DNA of 64,000 nt from Ostrea edulis (GCF_947568905.1 NC_079165.1:23808001-23872000), one strand, 5' to 3'. Positions 33,215 to 61,782 are shown, counted from the stretch's first letter. The notes: a model not told the origin generated them from the sequence alone. A program made the numbers and translations.

Positions 33215-33544
33215 GCTTCAATCTACACAACTTAGGAACATTTGCATTTTGATATGATTTATTGTGGCCCTGACTGCGACTGTAGTCTAGAGGTAGAGCA
33301 TTTGCCCCGCATGTAAAAGGTCGGGGTTCGAATCCCAGCCGCAACAGACCCAAGTCGTTATAACAAGTAGTGAGAGTTCCATCACCAAATGCTCGGTATC
33401 AGGTGTGAATGTCACAGGTCTTCAGAGATGACCTTAAAAGTGTATGCCCTGTATCACAGTAGGTGTGGCACGCTAAAGATCCCTCCATGCTTTAAGGCCG
33501 TAAGCGCTGAGCATAGGCCTAAATTTGAAGTCCTTCACCGGTAT

Positions 33545-42170: not shown

Positions 42171-43985
42171 GAAAGGTGAAGATAACGAACAGTGATCAAT
42201 GTCATAACTTGTACAAGGAATACAAAATAGAGAGTCGGGCAAACACGGACCCCGGGATATACCAGAAGTCGGATCAGATGCCTAGGAGGAGTAAGCATCT
42301 CCTGTCGACTGGTAAACCTGCCGTGAGCCCTTTATCTTGATCAGATAAACAAAGTAATCCATAGTCAAATTCAATGTGCCAAGGACGGTCTAATAATCGC
42401 CATGAAACACGTCAGACAGCATTTGACCCAAAGATAGGTTGTATTGGCAAATGAGATCATTATAACGACCATAGAATTTGCGAAATGCTGACTTTAAACG
42501 AGAATGTTGAAACACCTGATACACTAACTTGTTTGTCAGTAGCCTGCCTAGATTTAAAAACTGATCATACACAGAACAAGCTCTTGCGTATCGAATCAGT
42601 GTAAAGATATAAACATCATATGCAGATGATAATGGAATATTGCTACATAAATATGGGAAGTTGACGATAGAGAAGCTGAAATCATACCATTTGTCATAAA
42701 GTTTAGTTATTAGTTTGCGTTAAAGGGACTGGTTTACGATTTTTGATAAAAATATTTTTTCATTTTTGATGTTAAACATTTAGAATATAACTCATTTAAT
42801 GTTGACAACCAAATTTTGACCTTCTGAATGCAAGAATAAAAGCAATATTTTAGCCTTGAATCTGTGATATGTAAACAAAGACTCAAGTCTTTTTATGTAT
42901 ACAAAGAAACAAGTGAAATATAATTTTTGTAATATAAAGCATCTTAATTTTACGTAGTCACAAATTTTTAACTTTTAGATGACACATTTTACTCCAAAAA
43001 TACTTGAAATGTGAAAGATATAATAAACTTTGATCGATATCCATTTCTGTTGAAAATTTTGTAAACAATAACATACAGCAATCTTTGTTTACAAAACAAA
43101 TAATGAACTCTCTAAAATGTGCTTCATTTGATAATGTATAACCTTAATTTTTTATGTGAAATCTTTTAAACACATTAGACAGTCGATTTTGATCATTAAA
43201 AGTGAAAAAGAAAATTTTGGGGGAAATCGTGAATCAGTCCCTTTAATATTCATTTTCAGTAAAACATCGAAGTACGAAGCAGATGTGAAGGACTCTGTGG
43301 TATCTTTTATTTCGAGTTCAGAAGAATATATTGAATTGACATATGAATGAAAATGATTATTGTTGATGAAAGGAGAAGATAACGAACAGCGATAGATGAA
43401 ACGTCGACGATTATCTAAATGTCGAGTCGAAGGCCACAGCAAGAAATTGTTTCTTATGTAGAAGCTATTGAATAAACTATGCTTTATAAGAATATAAAAA
43501 CAGGTCAGATAACAAAGGAGCACAATTCATGTCCATGGGAATTCCAATATATTGTTGGAAGACCTGATCATTAAAGACTACGAAGATATTGTCAATGCGG
43601 AACTCCAGCATATTTCTTGTTTCAACTTCAGAGTACTTGTGTGTGGAATCAGAGTGGTAATGTTTTGGATGACAGATCGCTGGATACGAATATTTACTTT
43701 TTCCATCTTTGTTCAAGAATCAAGTGTCCATGATGTCAAAAATTCTCAACTTTTATCGTTAGAAATTTTCGTGTAAATTGTTGAAAGGTCGTACGTTTTG
43801 ATGTTGTTGATTTGAGAAAAGTTTTGCGATTTCAAATTTACTTAAAGTTGTTTGATTATTTTTAGAATCCATATTTGATTTACACCACTTCTGGCATATG
43901 TTGTTGCACAGCACGTTTGGAGTTTTCCTTTACAGCTGTTAATATCAATATTCAAGGAAGAACAGATGGGCAGAACCAAACATCC
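42171..43985 (-). mobile_element. Degenerate Penelope-like retroelement (RT fragment + 3' end), copy A, interrupted by a MITE
   Basis: RT motif QQYIGIPMDMNCAPLLSDLFLYSY (GIPMG motif), a decayed YIDD region, thumb region LLTNKLVYQVFQHSRLKSAFRKFYGRYNDL, and the family 3' end. Multiple frameshifts. Confidence 0.8.
42724..43242. mobile_element. Kolobok-type MITE (519 bp) inserted into Penelope-like copy A
   Basis: TIR AGGGACTG(G/A)TT(T/C)ACGATTT with TTAA duplicated at 42720-42723 and 43243-43246. The paralogous site in copy C (about 47995) has a single TTAA, i.e. the empty site. Confidence 0.88.
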
Positions 43986-47467: not shown

Positions 47468-48690
47468 ACGTGAAGATAATGAACAGTGATCAATCTCATA
47501 ACTCCTATAAGCAATACAAAATAGAGAGTTCGACTGACACCGACCCCTGGATATACCAGAGGTGGGATCAGGTGTCTAGGAGGAGTAAGCATCCCCTGTC
47601 GATCGGTCACACCCACCGTGAGCCATACATTTTGATCAGGTAAACAGAGTTATCCGTAGTCAGAATCAGTGTGCCAAGGGCGGCCTACAATCGATATGAA
47701 ATGCGCCAGACAGTATTTTACCCAATTACAGGTTGTTATAACGACCATAGAATTTGCAAAATGCTGACTTTACACGAGACTGTTGAAACCGCTGTAATAT
47801 CAACTTGTTTATCAGTAGACTGCCTCAATTAAAAACCTGTCGTGCACAGAACAAGCTCTTGCGTATCGAATCATTTGAGAGATATAAACACCATGTGCAG
47901 GCGATATTAGAATGTTGCTACGTAAATATGGGAAGATGATGATATAGAAGCTGAAATCACCCCGTTTATCATAAAGTTTAGTTGATAGTTTGCCATTAAT
48001 ATCTATTTTCAATACAATATATAAATATGACGCAGATGTGGATGACTTTGTGGTGTCTTTTATTTCGAGTCACAGGGATATATCGAATCTACATATGAAT
48101 GAAAATGCTTATTGTTAATGGATAAAACGTCGTTGATATATCTAAATGTCGAGTAGAAGGCCACAGCAAGATATTTTTTCTTCTCATTTAGAAGCTTTTA
48201 AAATAAATTCTGAATCAAAAGAATATATAACAAGTCAGCTAACAAGGAATTACATTTCGTGTCCATGAGAATTCCAACAGAATGTTGAAAGACCTGATCA
48301 CCAAAGACCACGAAGATATTGTCAATGAGGAACTCCAGCTTATTTTTTTTAAATTTCAACTTCAGAATACTTATGTGTCGAATCAGAGTGGTGTTTCAGA
48401 AAGTAATTTTTTGGATGACTGATCACCAGATATGAATATTTCATTGATCAAGTTTTGTTGAAGAAGTAATTGTTTATGATGTCGAAAAGGCTAGCCTTTA
48501 TTTTATCGTGAGGAATGGTCGTGTGAAGTGTTGAAAAGTTGCACGTTTTGATGCTGTTGATTTGATAAAAGCTTTGTGATTTCAAATTTACTGAAAGCTC
48601 TTAAGAATTGTTTTAGAATTCACATTTGATTTACACCACGTCTGTCATATTATGTTGTGCCATAGTAAGTTTATGGTTTTTCTTCACAGC
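47468..48690 (-). mobile_element. Degenerate Penelope-like retroelement, copy C
   Basis: ORF 47812-48012 (LSTKLYDKRGDFSF...SPAHGVYISQMIRYARACS) plus the family 3' end; colinear with copy A. Confidence 0.82.
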
Positions 48691-52682: not shown

Positions 52683-55600
52683 CTGAAAAAGGTAGCCTAC
52701 AATATAAACTGTAAATCTTGTAAGATTCACATTTATTCCATTTTCCCTTAACATTCTTACTGACTGAAACTGAAGGTTAACATCTCACAAACTTTAAGTT
52801 TATAAGTAGACTGATCACTGTGTATGAATAAACCTTACCAAAGGAGTGCAACACGAATTTATTATCAAAATAGAATTCAAATGATCGAAATGCAATCACA
52901 AGTAATGTCTTTCAGTTTTTAAAGTGCATTTTTTTTTATTGTGATGATATATCTCAAGCCCTTCACACCGACCTATATTTCAAATTCAATACGCCACTTG
53001 AAGTGGTTAGAGGTAATATCCTGTCATGCTTTTATTTCAAAATCTGAAAGTGCATTTGTTGTGCATTATATCTTGTTATGGGCATGTAAGTTCACTTCAT
53101 TAATATTAGGTAATTAATAGAACTGTTGTAGAGATAGCAATGGTATACAATGGAGACTGAAGAATATAGGAAACTCTGAACAATCATAAATAGCTTCCCA
53201 TCATCTTTACCTCTAAAAGCGAAATAGTAATCGCAACAGCTAGGACACGAGGGGCATTGTCCGTTATCTGGTCATTCAACAGGTCCTTTATAGCTTGATA
53301 ACAACCCTTAATAAAAAAACAATCAAAACAGAGTAGCTTGTGATGCAATGTTAATGGGAAAAGATGTTCAGAATATTACAAAGCATTTTCTTGAAACGTA
53401 AGAAGTGTTCACTCTGAAAGACGAGATGAACTCTTTCATTCTCTTTCTCTTTCTCTAAAATAAGCATTATCAATTTACATACTGATGTTTTACATAAATG
53501 GCAAGATGAGATGCGCTCCAACGAAAACAGAGTAGTTTGATACAGTATGTAGAGCATTCTTTTAAAATTAATAAAAGATGTGTTAATCTCTCGTCAATTG
53601 ACATATTTTGTGAAAGAAATTGATAAAACCTATAAACTCAGCAACATTTATATTCTAATTTATCATAGTGTGTTTTACATGTCCGAATGAGATTGCTAAA
53701 ATAGCGAGGAATAGAGAGAAATTTGAATGTTTCCCATGCATGATTCCCTCTCTTGTCAGTTTCGTATAGTCATTGTTAATACCTTTTTGTTATATGTTTC
53801 TCTTTGGAGAGAGTAATAACATTTTGTCGGGGCGGATTTGTAAGTACTCTCTGTGACCCCGATACAACAGGTCTTAGGAATGTCTGCGTTGGTTTCCTGA
53901 CAGTCTCCTTTAGTCGTGCACCATGTAGTCTGGTCAAAATCATTTGTTGTAGAGTTTACAGGATTTACGCCACAGCAGTCCAGCTATATTCAGTGAAAAT
54001 TATGAAACTATTTGTAAATTGCCGAATAGTGCCGAATACTCCAAATAGAAGATTTGAAAAAAGAAGAAGTCATTACACCCGAAATAGAGAATGATGGAGG
54101 ATTGATACATTTCAATACATTGCAGTATGCAAGGTGAAGATAACGAACAGTGATCAATATCGTAACTCCTACAAGCAATACAAAATAGATAGTTGGGCAA
54201 ACACGGACCCCTGGACACACCAGAGGTGGGATCAGGTACCTAGGAGGAGTAAGCATCCCCTGCTGACCGGTCACACCCGACGTGAGCCCCATATCCTGAT
54301 CAGGTAAACGGAGTTATCCGCAGTCAAATCAGTGTGCCAAGAACGGCTTAACAATCGGAATGAAACATGCTATTCTTTTCGTTAGAAAATTTAACAATTT
54401 CAAACTTACTGACATAAACATGATATTCCATGCATTAGATATGTCGTTTCCTCCATCTGTCGAATCATCCACAAACTTTGTCTTCAGGGACTCTAGAAGA
54501 TGAGATTTAATCTCATTTTCAATCTGAAAATATCAACCAAGCGTGATTCATCAAGGAATGCAAGTACAAAATAAAGGGTTACAGGTACTACCGAGTGACA
54601 AAATGGAGGAAGATAGTCGATACTCAGGAAATATGTCACGAACTTATTTATATGGTTTATTATTTCTAAAACCGCGTTCATGTCACGAAATTCCTCTGCT
54701 CTTCTTCTATATTCAAATTAAATGAAATAACTTGAAATTTATAAACCCCCAACCAAATAGGTGTTCATGAAATTGATATTTCCATGCATTTATGATTGAG
54801 TGAAAATACGAAGAAACACAATGATATGTGATTAAGAATTCTGTTTTAAAATATTTCAAGACCGAGGAGCTTATCCTGCATCATCCACGAAAGTAAGAAC
54901 TTTATTTGTATTTTACAACGACTCAGAAACATAACAGCCAACCGTTTACTTATACAGCAACAAATTAGGTCATCGTGACGTCATGGCAGTTTTAGAAACG
55001 GACTAGGCTTACATGTTTTTTCTGACGAAGAAGGTGAGGTGGTAGGGTATATTAGAAATATTTTGAAAACTATTTAGTTTGATGTTGACAGATTATGTCA
55101 ACTGCTTTGATTACACAGTCGAAGAAAACTACACATGTGTGGACAAGAAAACTACAAATACCTGGACAAGAAAACAACACATGCGTGGACAAGAAAACTA
55201 TGCATACATGGACAAGAAAACTTTACATGCGTGGGCAAGAAAATTACACGTGCGTGGACAAGAAAACTATACATGCTTGGACAAGAAAACTACACATGCG
55301 TGGACAAGAAAACTACATATGCGTGGACAAGAAAACTACACATGCATGGACAAGAAAACTATACATGCGTGGACATGAACACTACACATGCGTGGACAAG
55401 AAAACTACACATGCATGGAAGAGGGCTAACTTGTTTGTCAACTCTATTGTTGTATTAGCAAAATGAAGAAGTGCAAGTGAGATGTGTATCAATTTTCTCA
55501 TAATCAGTTATTTCGTATGAAGTAAAACTTATACGGTACCAATTTTGATGCACCAGATGCGCATTTCGACAAGTAATGTCTCTTCAGTAATGATCATCCA

Positions 55601-58600
55601 AAATGTTTGAAATCCGAAATAACAATAAACTTTTAGAACTATTATAGGAAAAAACAGAGTGCCAAAAAAGTAGAGTCAAATTCGTCCAAGGATAAGAGCT
55701 ATGCATGAGGGAGATAATCCTTAATTTTGAAATGAATTTCTAAATTTTATAACAGCAATTAAATATACATCCGTATTTTCAAGCTAGTAACGAAGTACTT
55801 AGCTACTGGGCTGTAGAGATCCTCGGGGACTAACAGTCCACCAGCAGAGGCCTCGATCCAGGGGTCATAATGTAAAACTTATACGGTACCAATTTTGATG
55901 CACCAGATGCGCATTTCGACAAGTAAAGTCTCTTCAGTGATGCTCAACCGAAATGTTTGAAATCGGAAATAACAATAAACTTTTAGAACTATTATAGGGA
56001 AAAACAGAGTGCCAAAAAAGTGGAGTCAAATTCGTCTAAGGATAAGAGCTATGCATGAGGGAGAAAATGAAGGTATATCGCAGAATGATGATCGCGGCAT
56101 TATTTTGATCTTTGCAATAACCTTGGTAGAATTATATATCATGGATATTTTATGTATTGAGTGATCTTAAGCAAGTGTATTTCTATTTTCAGAAATGTAG
56201 TTGCTTTCATAAATACTAGTTTTCATACATAAACTTGTTCGATGACTCATTTTATCAAGGAAATACTGTACATGGAATGTGTTCTAGTGCTTCCATATTG
56301 TAGTTCATATCTTCCCTGTCAGAATTCACATTTATCAACAAAACTATTTTGAAATTTTATCAACTATTTTGATCTGGTAGTAAAACTGGCTTTCATACAT
56401 ATTGCAAATGTGATACGCGCTCTCTGTTTCTGATGTTCTAAAATATATAATGTGACATATATAAACTATCACACACATTTCTGGAATGTGACATATATAA
56501 ATATCAAACACATTTCTGGAATGTGACATATATAAATATCACACACATTTCTGGAATGTGACATATGTAAATATCACACACATTTCTGGAATGTGACATA
56601 TATAAATATCACACACATTTCTGGAATGTGACATATATAAAATATCACACACATTTCTGGAACTCGGGAACTTTGTGTATTGACTCAGTAACACTTTCCT
56701 CAAGGTACCGTGTAGACCACAGGAGTATAACTATTGTTAGTTATTACGTCATTTCTCATGATAAACCACAGGATAATTTAAAGCACTATATACTTACGAG
56801 ATTTCTATGGATAAACCACAGGGTAATTTAAACCACTGTATACTTACGATATTACTATGGGTAAACCACAGGATAATTTAAACCACTATATACGGACGAT
56901 ATTTCTATGGATAAACTACAGAATAAACTAAACCACTATATACTTACGATATTTCTCTGGGTAAACCAAATGGCGATATTCATTGTTACTTACGCCATTT
57001 TTCATGATATACCACAGGATTATAACCGCTATCTTCATTAGTAACAGTAATAGTACCAAGACTGCGTACTGTAATGCAAGATTAAGAATTTAAGTATAAT
57101 AGTTACACGTTTCTTTTCCTATCTCTCTCTTCCTCCCTTCTCTTCCCCCTCCCTTCTTACTATCTCTTTTTTTTTTATATATGTATTGTGCTTTTCAGCC
57201 TATCTGATCAATGAAATACAAAATAACAATATAGTTGCGATTTTAGCAAGTGTTTAGTTTATATAATTATATAGAAATTCACAACAAATACACACATTTG
57301 ATTATACCTTGTTTCATTTATGTGTACATTTTGATAATTTGCCATTAAAGTTTGAAAAGTGAAGATAACAAACAGTGATCTATCTTAAAACTCCTATTAA
57401 GAATACAAAAACTAAAGTAGGGAAAACATAGACCCCGGAAACACCAGAGGCAAGATCTGTGTAAGTCTTCCATGTTGACCGGTAACATCTGATCAGGTAA
57501 TCGGAGTAATTCGTAGTCAAAAGTCATATATAAAGAACGACCTAACAGTTGGTATGAAACATTCAGAAAGGTTTGACCTAATGACAGGTTGTGTTTGCAA
57601 ATAATATTAAAACGGTCATAGAATTTTGAAAATACTGACTTTGACTAAATGAGTGTATTGAAATCCCTGTAGCATCAACTTATTTGTTAGTAACCTATCT
57701 TGACTTATATATAAACACTTGATCATACGCAGTACATGCTCTCGCGTATCGAGGAAGTTGGGGGACATAAACACCTCATGCAGGTGGTAATGGAATATTG
57801 TTAGATAAATATGGGAAGTTGACGACGGAGAAGCTGCGTAAAGTGAGGTTTCTAATTTGCCGCCAATGCCTATCCAGGGACGAACCAGAATTAAAAAATC
57901 CAGGGAGATCATCATTTATACTCTCAGTCATAAAAATCAATTTGCTAAACACTACTCTGATTCCACCTACAAATACTCTGAAGTTCCGTTTATTTGATGG
58001 AAATAAACGGCTCAGTGTGGGTTTGACGGGTCGACAGGATATGCTTACTTCTTCTAGGCACCTGATCCCACCTCTGGTATGTCCAGGAGTGTATGTTCTT
58101 AATTTTGCATTCCTTATAGGAGTTAGGCGATTTATCACTCTCCTTTATCTTCATCTTTTCATTAAAAAGATGCGGAGTTTCTTATTAACAATATCTAAGT
58201 TTTTAATAATCAGGTCTTCCAACAGTATGTTGGAATTCCAATGGGCACGAATTGCATTACTTTATTACCTGACCTATTTTTTTTGTATTTTTATGAGGCA
58301 GACATTATTGGAAAGCTTCTACTTCAGAAAAAATCTCTTACTGTGGCCTTCAACTCAACATTTGGATACATTGACGACGTATGCTCATTTTAATTCATAT
58401 GTCGATTGGATATATTACAGTGAAATCAAAATAAAAGCCACCTGAGTCTTTCAAATCTGCTTCATACTCAGATATTCTATTGAACATAGAGGTTAACGGC
58501 ACACTAACAACTCAACTTTATGATAAAGGGGATTACTTTAGCTTTTCAATCGTCAAATTGCCTCATATATGTAGCTACATTCCATTTTCAGCTGCATATG

Positions 58601-58767
58601 GGGTTTTTGTCTCTCAACTGATTTGGCACTTGGGGTGTGTTCTGCATATGAACAGTTTTTGAATCGAGACAGGTTACTGATAAATACGTTGATTTTATAA
58701 GGGTTTCAATAGCCTTGATTAAACTCAGCATTTCATGAATTCTATAGTCGTTATATTGATCTAATTT

Positions 58768-58827
<60 letters not shown>

Positions 58828-59681
58828 CTATTGTTAGGTCTAATGCTGTCTGATGTGTTTCATACCAATTGTTAGGTCGCTCTGTACATACATATTTTGA
58901 ATACGGATTACTCCGTATACCTGATCATGATATAGGGCTCACAGCAGGTGTGCATGACTGATCAATAAGGGGTCCTTACTCCTTTTATGCACCTGATCCC
59001 ACCTCTGGTGTGTCCAGGGGTCCGTGTTTGCTGTGGTCTAAATGTGTAATTCTTTATGGTATTTAGGAGATTGAACACTTCATTATCTTTACTTTTTCGT
59101 CTATGGATACAGTGTTCGGTATTGTCCTGGTATTATACATCACGAAATGCCAATGTACCATTGTAAAGTAGTTCACATGTTGAACAGATAGTTAAACTAC
59201 CAAAGCTGATAAACGGTTTTAATTTTATTTCATCGGACACAATATCCACTTGAAATACTTACCGTAACAAGCACGCATCTATTTTGGAAAAAAGCACCAA
59301 AGAATCCAAGAAAGGCCACCAAAAAGAGAAAAACACCGATGAAGATGAATATAATTGTCAGGCTGCCCACTAGGTTTCCCAACTTCCAGTCGTTCACAAC
59401 TATACCGTTCAGAACAGCTTTGATGTCGTCTTTAAGTCCCAATACATTTGATTTCATCAGCGCACCAACTACCAGTAAACCAAGTCCAATGACCTGAAAC
59501 ATTAACCGTGCTGTTAACATTGTTTCATACTATTGCTTTTAAAAAGTACTCCAATTTGTTTTCTCCCAAAATATTTCTTTTAGGAAAGGTGTTGATGCAG
59601 TTGACAAATAATTACCATGAATACAATGTTAATGGACATCAGAAACAGCCGCCCAATTTTCCCACCACAATTGAGAGTCAT
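52614..59681 (-). CDS. Tetraspanin family protein, about 283 aa, 7 coding exons
   Basis: join(59681-59616, 59493-59263, 57068-56994, 54523-54410, 53983-53783, 53306-53211, 52682-52614). All introns are GT-AG and phase 0. Four TM segments; large loop has CCG (LDCCGV), the PxxCC motif (IPKTCC) and GCY. Only the 59493-59263 exon appears in the ORF track. Confidence 0.93.
53211..53306 (-). CDS. Tetraspanin coding exon 6
   Basis: GCYQAIKDLLNDQITDNAPRVLAVAITISLLE; donor GAG|GTAAAG. Confidence 0.9.
53783..53983 (-). CDS. Tetraspanin coding exon 5 (CCG loop)
   Basis: LDCCGVNPVNSTTNDFDQTTWCTTKGDCQETNADIPKTCCIGVTESTYKSAPTKCYYSLQRETYNKK. Confidence 0.92.
54131..54368 (-). mobile_element. Penelope-like 3'-terminal segment in a tetraspanin intron
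   Basis: High identity to the family 3' end; it produces the spurious ORF 54008-54292 (MLTPPRYLIPPLVCPG). Confidence 0.85.
54410..54523 (-). CDS. Tetraspanin coding exon 4
   Basis: IENEIKSHLLESLKTKFVDDSTDGGNDISNAWNIMFMS; donor TCA|GTAAGT. Confidence 0.9.
55110..55420. repeat. 23-bp minisatellite, about 13 copies
   Basis: Unit GTGGACAAGAAAACTACACATGC; explains the three overlapping ORFs at 55079-55466. Confidence 0.95.
55550..55593 (-). ncRNA. Minimal type I hammerhead ribozyme, copy 1 (weakened stem I)
   Basis: Minus strand reads UCAUUA CUGAAGA GAC AUUACUU GUC GAAA UGCGCA UC UGGUGC. Core intact; stem I has 5 bp with two G-U pairs. Predicted cut at 55556|55555. Confidence 0.75.
55900..55943 (-). 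ncRNA. Minimal type I hammerhead ribozyme, copy 2 (better stem I)
   Basis: Minus strand reads GCAUCA CUGAAGA GAC UUUACUU GUC GAAA UGCGCA UC UGGUGC. Stem I GCAUCA/UGGUGC, core CUGANGA and GAAA, stem II GAC/GUC, palindromic stem III AUGCGCAU. AUC cleavage triplet predicts a cut at 55906|55905. Confidence 0.85.
56440..56660. repeat. 35-bp minisatellite, about 6 copies
   Basis: Unit GTGACATATATAAATATCACACACATTTCTGGAAT. Confidence 0.93.
56740..56970. repeat. 50-bp tandem repeat resembling the 3' end and donor of tetraspanin exon 3
   Basis: tacttacga.attt.ctatggataaaccacagg.taatttaaaccact.ta with period 50. Confidence 0.88.
56994..57068 (-). CDS. Tetraspanin coding exon 3 (TM3)
   Basis: YAVLVLLLLLMKIAVIILWYIMKNG; acceptor ttacAG, donor GGC|GTAAGT. 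Confidence 0.88.
57352..59100. mobile_element. Composite Penelope-like cluster in tetraspanin intron 2: copy F (-, about 57352-57890), inverted 3' end (+, about 58010-58160), and RT + 3' end copy G (+, about 58190-59100) split by (TA)n
   Basis: Decayed GIPMG region (ggaattccaatgggcacgaattgc), atacattgacgacgt (YIDD), LTTQLYDKGDYFSF and AYGVFVSQLI, plus three family 3' ends. Confidence 0.78.
58770..58823. repeat. (TA)n microsatellite inside Penelope-like copy G
   Basis: Uninterrupted TA run. Confidence 0.97.
59263..59493 (-). CDS. Tetraspanin coding exon 2 (TM1-TM2)
   Basis: VIGLGLLVVGALMK...LVAFLGFFGAFFQNRCVLVT; donor ACG|GTAAGT. Confidence 0.92.
59616..59681 (-). CDS. Tetraspanin coding exon 1
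   Basis: MTLNCGGKIGRLFLMSINIVFM; donor ATG|GTAATT; acceptor 15 nt upstream of the ATG. Confidence 0.88.
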
Positions 59682-60945: not shown

Positions 60946-61249
60946 CCAATGTGTTGGAGGTCTGGGAGTCTAAATCTTGAATGCATGTATTTCATCTTTG
61001 TGAGATTTAACTGTATATTATAAAGTAACAGGTAACTTTAATTGTATAGCTAGTAGAGACCTGATACTTGGACACATGTATAAGCCTACCTTTCTCTTAA
61101 CATATAATGAAGATCAAGGTGATATCTTAAGATTAAAGGCCAACTATGCGTCATTCGCCTTATTTGTCATTTTTCCCAAATCATATTTTCTCAAAAGTCC
61201 AAAAATATTAAAAATCCTAGGTTGGATTTTCTTTATTTTAAAATGTATA

Positions 61250-61782
61250 TGACAAACGGGATGATTTCAGCTTCTCCATCGTCAACTTCCCATATTTGTG
61301 TAGCAATATTCCATTATCACCTGCATATGGTGTTTATATATCTCAACTGATTCGATATGCAAGAGCTTGTTCTGCGTATAGTCAGTTTTTAAATCGAGGT
61401 AAGCTACTGACAAACAAGTTGATGGTACAGGGGTTTCAACAGTCTCGATTGAAGTCAGCATTTCGCAAATTCTATGGTCGTTATAACGATCTAGTTCGTC
61501 AGTACAACCTCGTATTGGGCCAAATGCTGTCTGACGTGTTTCATACCGATTGTTAAGCCGTTCTTGGCACACTGATTTTGACTGCGGATAACTCCGTTTA
61601 CCTGGTCAGGATATAGAGCTCACGGCGGGTGTGACCGGTCAATATGGGATGCTTACTCCTCCTAGGCACCTGATCCCACCTCTGGTGTGTCCAGGGATCA
61701 GTGTTTGCCCAACTATCTATTTTGTATTGCTTATAGGAGTTATGAGATTGATCATTGTTCGTTATCTTCGCCTTGCATCAAT
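61250..61782 (+). mobile_element. Penelope-like retroelement 3' portion, best-preserved copy
   Basis: ORF 61296-61556 (CSNIPLSPAYGVYISQLIRYARACSAYSQFLNRGKLLTNKLMVQGFQQSRLKSAFRKFYGRYNDL...VFHTDC*) followed by the complete family 3' end. Confidence 0.85.

What the first reader, a model, noticed from the sequence alone, without database searches (positions are those of the whole stretch)
55523..56064. Retrozyme-like unit: paired hammerhead ribozymes 350 nt apart that could excise a circular RNA from a tetraspanin intron
Seen: a 350-nt direct repeat in which each copy, read on the minus strand, has all conserved hammerhead nucleotides (CUGAAGA, GAAA, AUC triplet). Each has a 3-bp stem II, a stem I and a palindromic stem III (AUGCGCAU). 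Established: minimal type I hammerheads with palindromic stem III are typical of Penelope-like elements and metazoan non-LTR retrozymes, cleave best as dimers, and yield circular RNAs of a few hundred nt. Inference: the two copies can pair through the palindrome, cut at 55906|55905 and 55556|55555, and release a 350-nt monomer (5'-OH, 2',3'-cyclic phosphate) that can be circularised. I did not see an ORF in the unit.
Basis: partly seen in the sequence, partly recalled or inferred. Interest (0 to 1): 0.9.

Follow-up and report, generated by a model that had tools for sequence, protein, structure and literature searches.

The report
Hammerhead retrozyme copy in tetraspanin intron
This is one slightly decayed copy of a very abundant, non-coding mobile repeat of a mollusc genome that carries self-cutting hammerhead RNA motifs; this kind of element is already described in mussels, corals and salamanders, so the locus is real but ordinary.

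Summary
On the minus strand, 56068-55522 is 1.56 copies of a 350-nt unit: a 163-nt 5'-truncated unit, a full unit and a 34-nt end piece. There are two complete type I hammerhead motifs, with predicted cuts at 55906|55905 and 55556|55555. None is expected by chance.

It is not a one-off. The consensus hammerhead occurs at least 6,146 times exactly in this 895-Mb genome. Insertions share a fixed 3' end 34-39 nt (usually 36-38) past the cut site and have variable 5' ends, as expected for reverse transcription of a template longer than one unit. The unit is non-coding and has 39% GC. Penelope-like elements with their own minimal hammerheads are abundant in the same genome.

RNA libraries labelled mollusc hold contigs of one unit plus about k-1 letters, without flanks. 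That fits circles or multimers, but these contigs match the family consensus, not this copy.

This copy differs from the consensus by 5.1%. Its downstream ribozyme has a weakened helix I. It lies in sense orientation between tetraspanin-like exons. Cutting at this locus is untested.

Rfam models do not detect the motif. The partner element was not identified.

The scan has already met this family elsewhere in the same genome.

Verdict: new member of a known kind (metazoan non-LTR retrozyme).

The parts
55522..56068 (-). Whole retrozyme insertion, 547 bp: a 5'-truncated unit, a full unit and a 3' terminal piece
   Evidence: BLAST of the monomer against the locus gives query 188-350, 1-350 and 1-34 in tandem. 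Repeat D4 has 350-nt spacing.
55906..56068 (-). 5'-truncated upstream unit (unit positions 188-350), ending at the first cut site
   Evidence: It is 94% identical to the matching part of the full unit.
55900..55943 (-). Upstream hammerhead. Helix I 5' strand 55943-55938; core CUGAAGA 55937-55931; helix II 55930-55918; GAAA 55917-55914; palindromic helix III 55913-55908; U16.1 55907; C17 55906; helix I 3' strand 55905-55900
   Evidence: Read; pattern hit. It differs from the family consensus only at two loop-2 positions.
55556..55905 (-). Full 350-nt unit between the two predicted cut sites, the putative excised monomer
   Evidence: It differs from the 351-nt family consensus at 18 positions, 5.1%.
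55550..55593 (-). Downstream hammerhead. Same layout shifted by 350; C17 at 55556. Helix I is weakened: 2.2 C>U gives G.U and 2.6 G>U gives a C.U mismatch
   Evidence: The RNA contigs carry the consensus bases at 55589 and 55593.
55522..55555 (-). 3' terminal piece (unit positions 1-34), the fixed 3' end of the family
   Evidence: 26 of 28 independent insertions end at unit position 34-39.
59233..59529 (-). Tetraspanin-like coding ORF (TM1-TM2 region), upstream exon of the host gene
   Evidence: Pfam PF00335, E 3.4e-7, 30.6 bits, just below the 32.1 cut-off.
53759..53983 (-). ORF with CCG and further cysteine motifs, probably an exon for the tetraspanin large extracellular loop
   Evidence: Six-frame translation. 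No Pfam hit, so this rests on the motif only.

Best explanation
The stretch is one insertion of a high-copy, non-coding, non-autonomous retrotransposon of the metazoan non-LTR retrozyme kind.

Inferred life cycle of the family:
1. A transcript longer than one unit folds so that two hammerheads 350 nt apart pair through the palindrome AUGCGCAU and swap their helix I strands, forming a double-hammerhead.
2. [quoted passage not shown]
3. A host RtcB-type ligase closes the monomer into a circle.
4. A reverse transcriptase, most likely from a Penelope-like element, starts about 34-39 nt (usually 36-38) downstream of the restored junction. It copies more than one lap and stops at a variable point.
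5. The result is insertions of 1.1 to 3.9 units with a fixed 3' end and a ragged 5' end.

Shown here: the motif, the copy number, the insertion architecture, the lack of coding capacity, the presence in RNA libraries as a cyclic sequence one unit long, and the co-occurrence with Penelope-like elements.

Inferred, not shown: cleavage, ligation, the circle as template, and which element supplies the enzyme.

The copy in the window is an older, 5%-diverged insertion. It lies in sense orientation in an intron of a tetraspanin-like gene and is probably passive or only weakly active.
For: - **Motif.** Both copies have all core nucleotides, the G10.1-C11.1 pair, the A15.1-U16.1 pair and C17.
- **Dimer.** Cofolding predicts the double-hammerhead topology. 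The consensus gives -35.3 against -23.6 kcal/mol for two monomers; this locus gives -30.0 against -20.3.
- **Copy number.** The 41-nt consensus hammerhead has 6,146 exact matches, and the core with helices II and III and any loop 2 has 8,287. The reversed-pattern control has 0. Copies lie on all ten large contigs.
- **Architecture.** In 28 independent insertions the 3' end lies at unit position 34-39 in 26, while the 5' end ranges from 1 to 314. Insertions span 382-1352 bp. Clear target-site duplications were seen at L014 (9-12 bp) and L024 (8-15 bp).
- **Non-coding.** The consensus is 351 nt with 39% GC. No stop-free stretch in a trimer exceeds 56 aa.
- **Helix II selection.** Pair-preserving transitions outnumber pair-breaking ones: 72 G.U against 18 A.C at 10.2/11.2, and 201 U.G against 101 C.A at 10.3/11.3. 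Some preserving variants are shared by all units of an array.
- **RNA.** Two RNA-seq runs labelled mollusc metagenome hold contigs of 380 and 377 nt. These cover one unit plus 24-28 nt, are permuted differently and have no flanks. A marine metatranscriptome holds a 321-nt contig.
- **Partner class present.** There are at least 1,102 first-look GIY-YIG candidates. One Penelope-like family with a 973-aa ORF has a min-hammerhead about 46 nt before its 3' end, the same layout as the retrozyme.
- **Literature.** The kind is described in PMC7229834, PMC7761336, PMC4209133 and bioRxiv 10.64898/2026.07.22.740005.
Against: - No Rfam hammerhead model matches the locus, even at E<=10.
- No cleavage, RNA-end or RNase R evidence is available. 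The runs were Logan contigs only, which cannot tell a circle from a tandem multimer or from DNA carried into an RNA library.
- The unit RNA is not more stable than shuffled sequence: z +0.27 linear and -0.17 circular. Published retrozyme circles are described as highly self-paired.
- In the full transcript, the minimum-energy fold puts each palindrome in a local hairpin with the helix I 3' strand instead of in the double-hammerhead.
- No compensatory double change was found in helix II: 0 G-C at 10.2/11.2. The family is too young for covariation.
- Target-site duplications are not above a shuffled-flank control overall.
- The partner element was not found. The apparent similarity to a Penelope-like 3' UTR disappeared when the consensus was tested against shuffles.
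Confidence: 0.85

Rival explanations
1. Dead repeat at this locus. The family is a retrozyme, but this copy is an inert relic. Its ribozymes do not cut the tetraspanin pre-mRNA to any meaningful degree and no circle comes from here.
For: The copy is 5.1% from the consensus, at the top of the 3-18 differences seen in 38 units. The downstream helix I has lost one pair and has two G.U pairs. The enforced double-hammerhead lies 9.6 kcal/mol above the minimum-energy fold, against 3.5 for the consensus. The RNA contigs carry consensus bases, not this copy's.
Against: Both catalytic cores, helix II and the palindrome are intact. The element is in sense orientation inside a transcribed gene, so it is likely to be transcribed. 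Cofolding of the two motifs still favours the dimer by 9.7 kcal/mol.
Confidence: 0.6
2. Solo pseudo-LTR or 3' remnant of an autonomous Penelope-like element, not an independent non-autonomous element.
For: Partial tandems with a fixed 3' end and 5' truncation are the hallmark of Penelope-like insertions (PMC8557442). Penelope-like elements are abundant here and carry hammerheads near their 3' ends.
Against: In 28 insertions with 1.5-kb flanks, the sequence upstream of the repeat differs every time and no reverse-transcriptase ORF is attached. The unit shows no significant similarity to the 3' UTR of the sampled 973-aa family: score 14 against a shuffle mean of 14.5. The hammerhead lacks the extra nucleotide after A9 and the long helix II of the Penelope-like motifs in this genome.
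Confidence: 0.07
3. Satellite-type tandem repeat that spread by DNA-level processes such as unequal crossing-over or segmental duplication, with a hammerhead-like motif that has no role.
For: Arrays of up to 3.9 units exist. The RNA fold is not special.
Against: Thousands of dispersed short insertions lie on all large contigs, each with unique flanks. They share a common 3' end and a ragged 5' end, and some have target-site duplications. Pair-preserving helix II variants are 2.3 times as frequent as pair-breaking ones.
Confidence: 0.04
4. Chance resemblance to a hammerhead in an AT-rich repeat.
For: Rfam models do not score it.
Against: No pattern hit occurred in 100 shuffles of the window. 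All 11 core positions plus three helices are in the correct order in both copies. The motif is identical in more than 6,000 copies. Four other hammerhead families in the same genome keep the core while helices I, II and III differ in sequence but stay paired or palindromic.
Confidence: 0.02

Closest known systems
Metazoan non-LTR retrozymes (Cervera and de la Pena 2020, PMC7229834), in particular the 350-390-nt retrozyme of the mussel Mytilus galloprovincialis
   Same: Non-coding repeat of about 350 nt with a type I hammerhead. Thousands of copies, low GC, no LTR. Found in a mollusc, present in RNA, and co-resident with Penelope-like elements.
   Different: The mussel ribozyme self-cleaves as a single motif (about 0.1 per min). 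Here helix III is only a short palindrome, so a dimer should be needed, as in axolotl. Copies here are mostly dispersed 1.1-1.6-mers rather than long arrays. The RNA is not predicted to be highly self-paired. No sequence comparison with the mussel element was possible.
Newt and axolotl satellite 2 / retrozyme hammerheads and ASBVd-type double-hammerheads (Forster et al. 1988, as cited in PMC4209133)
   Same: Weak helix III with a palindromic loop. Activity is expected only when two motifs pair, so multimers are cut and monomeric circles are spared.
   Different: Different phylum and no sequence relation. Here helix II is only 3 bp and no loop-loop contacts are recognisable.
Min-hammerheads of Penelope-like elements (Cervera and de la Pena 2014, PMC4209133)
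   Same: Palindromic 15.2-16.2 region, G10.1-C11.1 pair, position near the 3' end of a retroelement that inserts as partial tandems. Such elements are present in this genome.
   Different: The retrozyme motif lacks the unpaired nucleotide between A9 and 10.1. It has a 3-bp rather than a 5-8-bp helix II and a 6-bp rather than a 3-5-bp helix I. No ORF is attached.
Plant LTR retrozymes (PMC4918200)
   Same: Non-autonomous elements whose transcript is cut by two hammerheads into a monomer that is circularised.
   Different: Plant elements have type III hammerheads inside LTRs of about 350 bp, a primer binding site, a polypurine tract and 4-bp target-site duplications, and depend on Ty3/Gypsy elements. 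None of that applies here.
[quoted passage not shown]
   Same: A hammerhead on the sense strand of an intron of a protein-coding gene.
   Different: Those are single, conserved, domesticated motifs. This one is a recent transposon copy with no sign of conservation at the locus.

Membership tests
Hammerhead ribozyme, type I | Core C3 U4 G5 A6 N7 G8 A9 ... G12 A13 A14, with the A15.1-U16.1 pair and H17 at the cut site | tested here: met
   Both copies read CUGAAGA ... GAAA ... U C.
Hammerhead ribozyme, type I | Helices I and II base-paired around the core, G10.1-C11.1 closing pair, open end at helix I | tested here: met
   Helix II is GAC/GUC. Helix I is 6 bp in the upstream copy and 5 bp with two G.U in the downstream copy.
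Hammerhead ribozyme, type I | Match to the curated covariance model (Rfam RF00163 and related models) | tested here: not met
   No hit at the gathering score or at E<=10. The whole-genome run scored only 73 of 85,583 candidates and found nothing anywhere, controls included. I read this as a limit of the model for motifs without a stable helix III, not as exclusion.
Hammerhead ribozyme, type I | Self-cleavage at the predicted site | not testable with these tools
   Needs in vitro transcription or RNA-end mapping. The available runs were contigs only.
Hammerhead ribozyme, type I | Covariation that keeps the helices | tested here: inconclusive
   Within the family there are no compensatory doubles: 0 G-C at 10.2/11.2. 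Pair-preserving transitions number 273 against 119 pair-breaking. Across five hammerhead families of this genome the helices differ in sequence but stay paired. Those are not homologous positions.
Metazoan non-LTR retrozyme | Non-coding repeat of about 150-450 bp present as dimers to multimers, each unit with a type I hammerhead | tested here: met
   351-nt unit, insertions of 1.1-3.9 units, no stop-free stretch over 56 aa.
Metazoan non-LTR retrozyme | Low GC (below 45-50%), no LTR | tested here: met
   GC is 39%. The repeated ends are just the next unit of the tandem. No primer binding site or polypurine tract was searched for.
Metazoan non-LTR retrozyme | Expressed as linear and circular RNA of unit length | tested here: inconclusive
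   Contigs in RNA libraries have unit length plus about k-1, are permuted and have no flanks. This fits a circle, but also a multimer or carried-over DNA.
Metazoan non-LTR retrozyme | Co-occurrence with Penelope-like elements that carry hammerheads | tested here: met
   At least 1,102 GIY-YIG candidates, intact ORFs of 787-973 aa, and min-hammerheads at their 3' ends.
Penelope-like element (autonomous) or its pseudo-LTR | Reverse transcriptase plus GIY-YIG ORF attached to, or sequence identity with, the repeat | tested here: not met
   The sequence just upstream of the repeat differs at each of 28 insertions. There is no significant similarity to the sampled 3' UTR.

The most novel reading that the evidence does not exclude
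The nearly invariant 3' end, 34-39 nt (usually 36-38) past the hammerhead junction, combined with 5' ends scattered over more than one lap, would mean that the reverse transcriptase starts at a defined internal site next to the ribozyme. The template would already have its junction restored, that is, a ligated circle. The hammerhead fold itself would be the recognition handle shared with Penelope-like elements, whose own 3' end lies about 46 nt past their ribozyme. If so, this young family of at least 6,000 copies would make the unsolved question of how animal retrozymes are mobilised directly testable.
Probability: 0.25. Interest if true: 0.65.

Novelty: new member of a known kind. Interest (0 to 1): 0.3.

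Why it matters
Animal retrozymes are a recently recognised source of abundant small circular RNAs, and how they move is still unknown. This locus adds little by itself.

The family it belongs to is more useful. It is very young, has at least 6,000 perfect ribozymes, and has a sharply defined 3' end with a ragged 5' end. The full papers I read here do not report that end structure for animal retrozymes, though I did not survey all the literature. This makes the family a convenient system for testing whether a circle is the template and which Penelope-like element supplies the enzymes.

The sense-strand position inside an intron is a natural test case for whether such ribozymes harm host transcripts. 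A 2026 preprint reports that retrozymes are depleted from introns in vertebrates.

Tried and rejected
1. **Rfam scans.** Scans of the window at the gathering score, and of 55400-56200 at E<=10, gave no hammerhead. RF00163 on the whole genome gave nothing, and the search scored only 73 of 85,583 candidates, so it is uninformative.
2. **Link to a Penelope-like 3' UTR.** BLAST of this copy gave 69% identity over 74 nt (E 0.002) to the 3' UTR of the 973-aa family. With the family consensus the local score (14) equals the shuffle mean (14.5). I rejected the link as an accident of this copy's own mutations.
3. **Partner search.** The partner stays unidentified.
4. **Target-site duplications.** The longest shared word between flanks averages 5.8 against 5.0 in mismatched flank pairs. 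Only two insertions are convincing. For this copy a 6-bp CTTCAT at both junctions is possible but weak.
5. **Viroid-like rod structure.** Rejected; z is about 0 for both the linear and the circular fold.
6. **Compensatory helix II subfamily (G-C at 10.2/11.2).** None exists.
7. **5' ends at the cut site.** Four insertions begin within a few nt of the cut site (three upstream, one 7 nt inside the unit), but none begins exactly at it.
8. **Run X1.** Its very high depth is of unknown library type, so I did not use it as expression evidence.
Full report
**What is in the sequence.** On the minus strand, window 56068-55522 is a head-to-tail repeat with a 350-nt period. Two 202-nt copies are 94% identical. 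Aligned to the unit defined by the two predicted cut sites, the locus has three parts:
- a 5'-truncated unit covering unit positions 188-350 (56068-55906);
- one full unit (55905-55556);
- a 34-nt piece of the next unit (55555-55522).

Each copy carries a complete type I hammerhead. The parts in order are a helix I 5' strand, CUGAAGA, helix II GAC/GUC with a 7-nt loop, GAAA, the palindrome UGCGCA between A15.1 and U16.1, C17, and the helix I 3' strand UGGUGC. A pattern for the core plus helix III matches exactly twice in the 64-kb window and never in 100 shuffles. The longest ATG-started ORF in the element is 40 aa. I attribute this to the lack of a stable helix III rather than to the motif being spurious.

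**It is one copy of a very large, young family.** The genome assembly has 895 Mb in 52 contigs. The 350-nt unit finds copies about 95% identical on all ten large contigs, from 2,901 first-look candidates. The 41-nt consensus hammerhead has 6,146 exact matches. The core with helices II and III and any loop 2 has 8,287. The reversed-pattern control has none. A consensus built from 38 units is 351 nt long. Sampled units differ from it at 3-18 positions, and the window copy at 18, or 5.1%. This copy is therefore at the old end of the sampled copies. The sample was chosen by similarity to this copy, which may bias these figures.

**Insertion architecture.** I examined 28 independent insertions, each with 1.5-kb flanks.
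- The 3' end lies at unit position 34-39 in 26 of them, reading ...AAGTTTTACAT(T).
- The 5' end falls anywhere from position 1 to 314.
- Total lengths run from 382 to 1,352 bp, that is 1.1 to 3.9 units.
- Flanks are unrelated between loci.
- Two insertions show clear target-site duplications: L014 with 9-12 bp and L024 with 8-15 bp. Overall the flank matches are not above a mismatched-flank control.
- There is no poly(A) or microsatellite tail.

This is the pattern expected from target-primed reverse transcription that starts at a fixed template site and stops early. It is also the partial-tandem pattern of Penelope-like elements (PMC8557442). Every insertion contains at least one intact junction between position 351 and position 1. 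The template was therefore either uncut or religated, not a linear cleaved monomer. Circular RNA as a more-than-unit template was proposed for Penelope-like elements and retrozymes (PMC4209133, PMC7229834). The data here fit that proposal but do not prove it.

**Ribozyme structure and likely mode of action.** As a single motif, helix III can form only two A-U pairs around a GCGC loop. The single motifs fold no better than shuffled sequence. Cofolding two motifs predicts the double-hammerhead: an 8-bp intermolecular AUGCGCAU duplex with swapped helix I strands. The energies are:

| Sequences | Dimer (kcal/mol) | Two monomers (kcal/mol) |
|---|---|---|
| Consensus | -35.3 | -23.6 |
| Window copies | -30.0 | -20.3 |

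In whole transcripts the minimum-energy fold instead puts each palindrome into a local hairpin with the helix I 3' strand. That hairpin would hide the cut site. Enforcing the full double-hammerhead costs 3.5 kcal/mol for a consensus 1.6-mer and 9.6 kcal/mol for the window locus. The active fold is thus an accessible alternative for the consensus and less so for this copy. The downstream helix I of this copy has C>U at 2.2 and G>U at 2.6.

According to PMC4209133, a weak palindromic helix III is typical of canonical metazoan type I hammerheads, and it limits cutting to multimers. The Penelope-like min-hammerheads are marked by an extra nucleotide after A9, a long helix II and a short helix I. 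Those marks are present in the Penelope-like elements of this genome (CUGA[A/C]GA-A-GGGAC...GUCCC-GAAA-AU-UU) but absent from the retrozyme motif.

**Selection on the helices.** The family is too young for covariation, and no G-C double change exists at 10.2/11.2. Counts of single transitions in helix II are nevertheless asymmetric:

| Pair | Pair-preserving | Pair-breaking |
|---|---|---|
| 10.2/11.2 | 72 (G.U) | 18 (A.C) |
| 10.3/11.3 | 201 (U.G) | 101 (C.A) |
| Total | 273 | 119 |

In each pair the two changes are complementary transitions, so strand-symmetric mutation predicts about 1:1. By my arithmetic the excess is about 7.8 standard deviations. Copies are not independent, however, and sequence context may matter. 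Some preserving variants are shared by all units of an array (for example C1:96517036, 96517387 and 96517737). This means they were already in the template, so those variants were able to transpose. I saw no adjacent units sharing a breaking variant in the listed places. I take this as modest evidence that helix II pairing matters for propagation.

Five different hammerhead families in this genome keep the core while helices I and II differ in sequence and stay paired. Their helix III is palindromic in each: AAUU, AGCGCU or AUGCGCAU.

**RNA.** Five runs on record as RNA hold part of the stretch: four small RNA-seq libraries labelled mollusc metagenome and one marine metatranscriptome. Only assembled contigs were available.
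- One mollusc run holds a 380-nt contig covering 55549-55926.
- A second holds a 377-nt contig covering 55522-55895.
- Each is one unit plus 24-28 nt. They are permuted differently and have no flanking sequence.

This is what a cyclic assembly graph gives for a circle or a tandem multimer. The second contig bridges the 55556|55555 junction with more than 31 nt on both sides. These contigs differ from the window copy at 16-18 positions and carry the family consensus. That includes the bases which restore helix I at 55589 and 55593. The expressed molecules therefore come from consensus-like copies, and nothing shows that this locus contributes. Contigs cannot show ends, strand or level, and DNA carry-over cannot be excluded.

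**Host context.** Tetraspanin-like coding ORFs lie on the minus strand on both sides of the element. One is 59233-59529 (PF00335, E 3.4e-7, 30.6 bits against a 32.1 cut-off). The other is 53759-53983 and has a CCG motif but no Pfam hit. I did not build a gene model. A 2026 preprint reports depletion of retrozymes from introns in vertebrates (10.64898/2026.07.22.740005). Whether this copy affects the host transcript is unknown.

**Partner element.** Penelope-like elements are abundant: at least 1,102 GIY-YIG candidates and intact ORFs of 787-973 aa. One family ends about 46 nt after its own min-hammerhead cut site, followed by (TA)n or (TG)n. That layout parallels the retrozyme's 34-39 nt. An apparent sequence link between this copy and that family's 3' UTR did not survive a test with the consensus against shuffles. 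The partner remains unidentified.

**Comparison with what is known, and verdict.** The element meets the descriptive criteria of metazoan non-LTR retrozymes (PMC7229834, PMC7761336): a type I hammerhead, a non-coding unit of about 350 nt, multimeric copies, low GC, no LTR, presence in RNA, and co-occurrence with Penelope-like elements. Circular RNA and self-cleavage, the functional criteria, could not be tested.

It differs from the mussel retrozyme in three ways. It needs a dimeric ribozyme, it is mostly dispersed as 1.1-1.6-mers, and it lacks a strongly self-paired RNA (z about 0). My literature searches found no paper describing this family in oysters. Earlier notes of this scan had already met the same family on other pieces of this genome and called it an oyster retrozyme. 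I did not verify the species.

The finding is real and correctly read. It is a new member of a known kind, and the locus itself is an ordinary, somewhat decayed copy.

Noticed in passing
L041:2700-2900 (minus strand), G000:C9 about 52627241-52627491: A foldback (inverted-repeat) element of about 200 nt. One arm carries a minimal hammerhead (ACUGU CUGAAGA GGC..GCC GAAA GCGC UA). The other arm is its complement with core changes. It has 722 first-look candidates in the genome, matches both strands, and is flanked by microsatellites.
   Followed up: partly
L055:2741-6535 and relatives L033, L036, L037, L042: A Penelope-like element family with a 973-aa ORF. A min-hammerhead (extra A after A9, AAUU helix III) lies about 46 nt before the 3' end, which abuts (TA)n or (TG)n. 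A diverged sister family (L034, L045, L049) keeps the motif with position 7 changed from A to C.
   Followed up: partly
G000:C1:110503255-110510943 (L051) and paired hits such as C2:32785322/32789647: A second Penelope-like family with a 787-aa ORF. It occurs as head-to-tail copies with a 3,717-bp period and as inverted pairs. My motif scan found no hammerhead in it.
   Followed up: no
window 55076-55466: A tandem array of a 23-nt unit (about 17 copies, 60-88% identical) immediately downstream of the retrozyme on the minus strand. It is not part of the retrozyme, because other insertions have unrelated flanks.
   Followed up: no
window 56464-56676 and 56744-57023: Two further minisatellites with 35-nt and 50-nt units, just upstream of the retrozyme on the minus strand, in the same presumed intron.
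   Followed up: no
window 33276-33343 (+): A tRNA-like sequence that just passes the Rfam gathering score (31.3 against 29 bits), with a shortened T arm. It could be a tRNA gene, a pseudogene or a SINE head.
   Followed up: no
window 42393-42719(-), 47815-48069(-), 57348-57915(-), 58435-58659(+), 61242-61553(+): At least five fragments of one dispersed repeat that encode a similar peptide (...FSFSIVNFPYLCSNIP...YARACS...LTNKL...). A second recurring peptide (...GMLTPPRHLIPPLV.PGV...) lies nearby. Both are probably pieces of a transposable element.
   Followed up: no
L037:136-527 and L055:7759-8126: Two of the 27 Penelope-like loci fetched have a retrozyme copy within 1.5 kb of the element's 3' end. 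This is more than copy density alone would suggest (about 0.5-1 expected), but the numbers are too small to judge.
   Followed up: no
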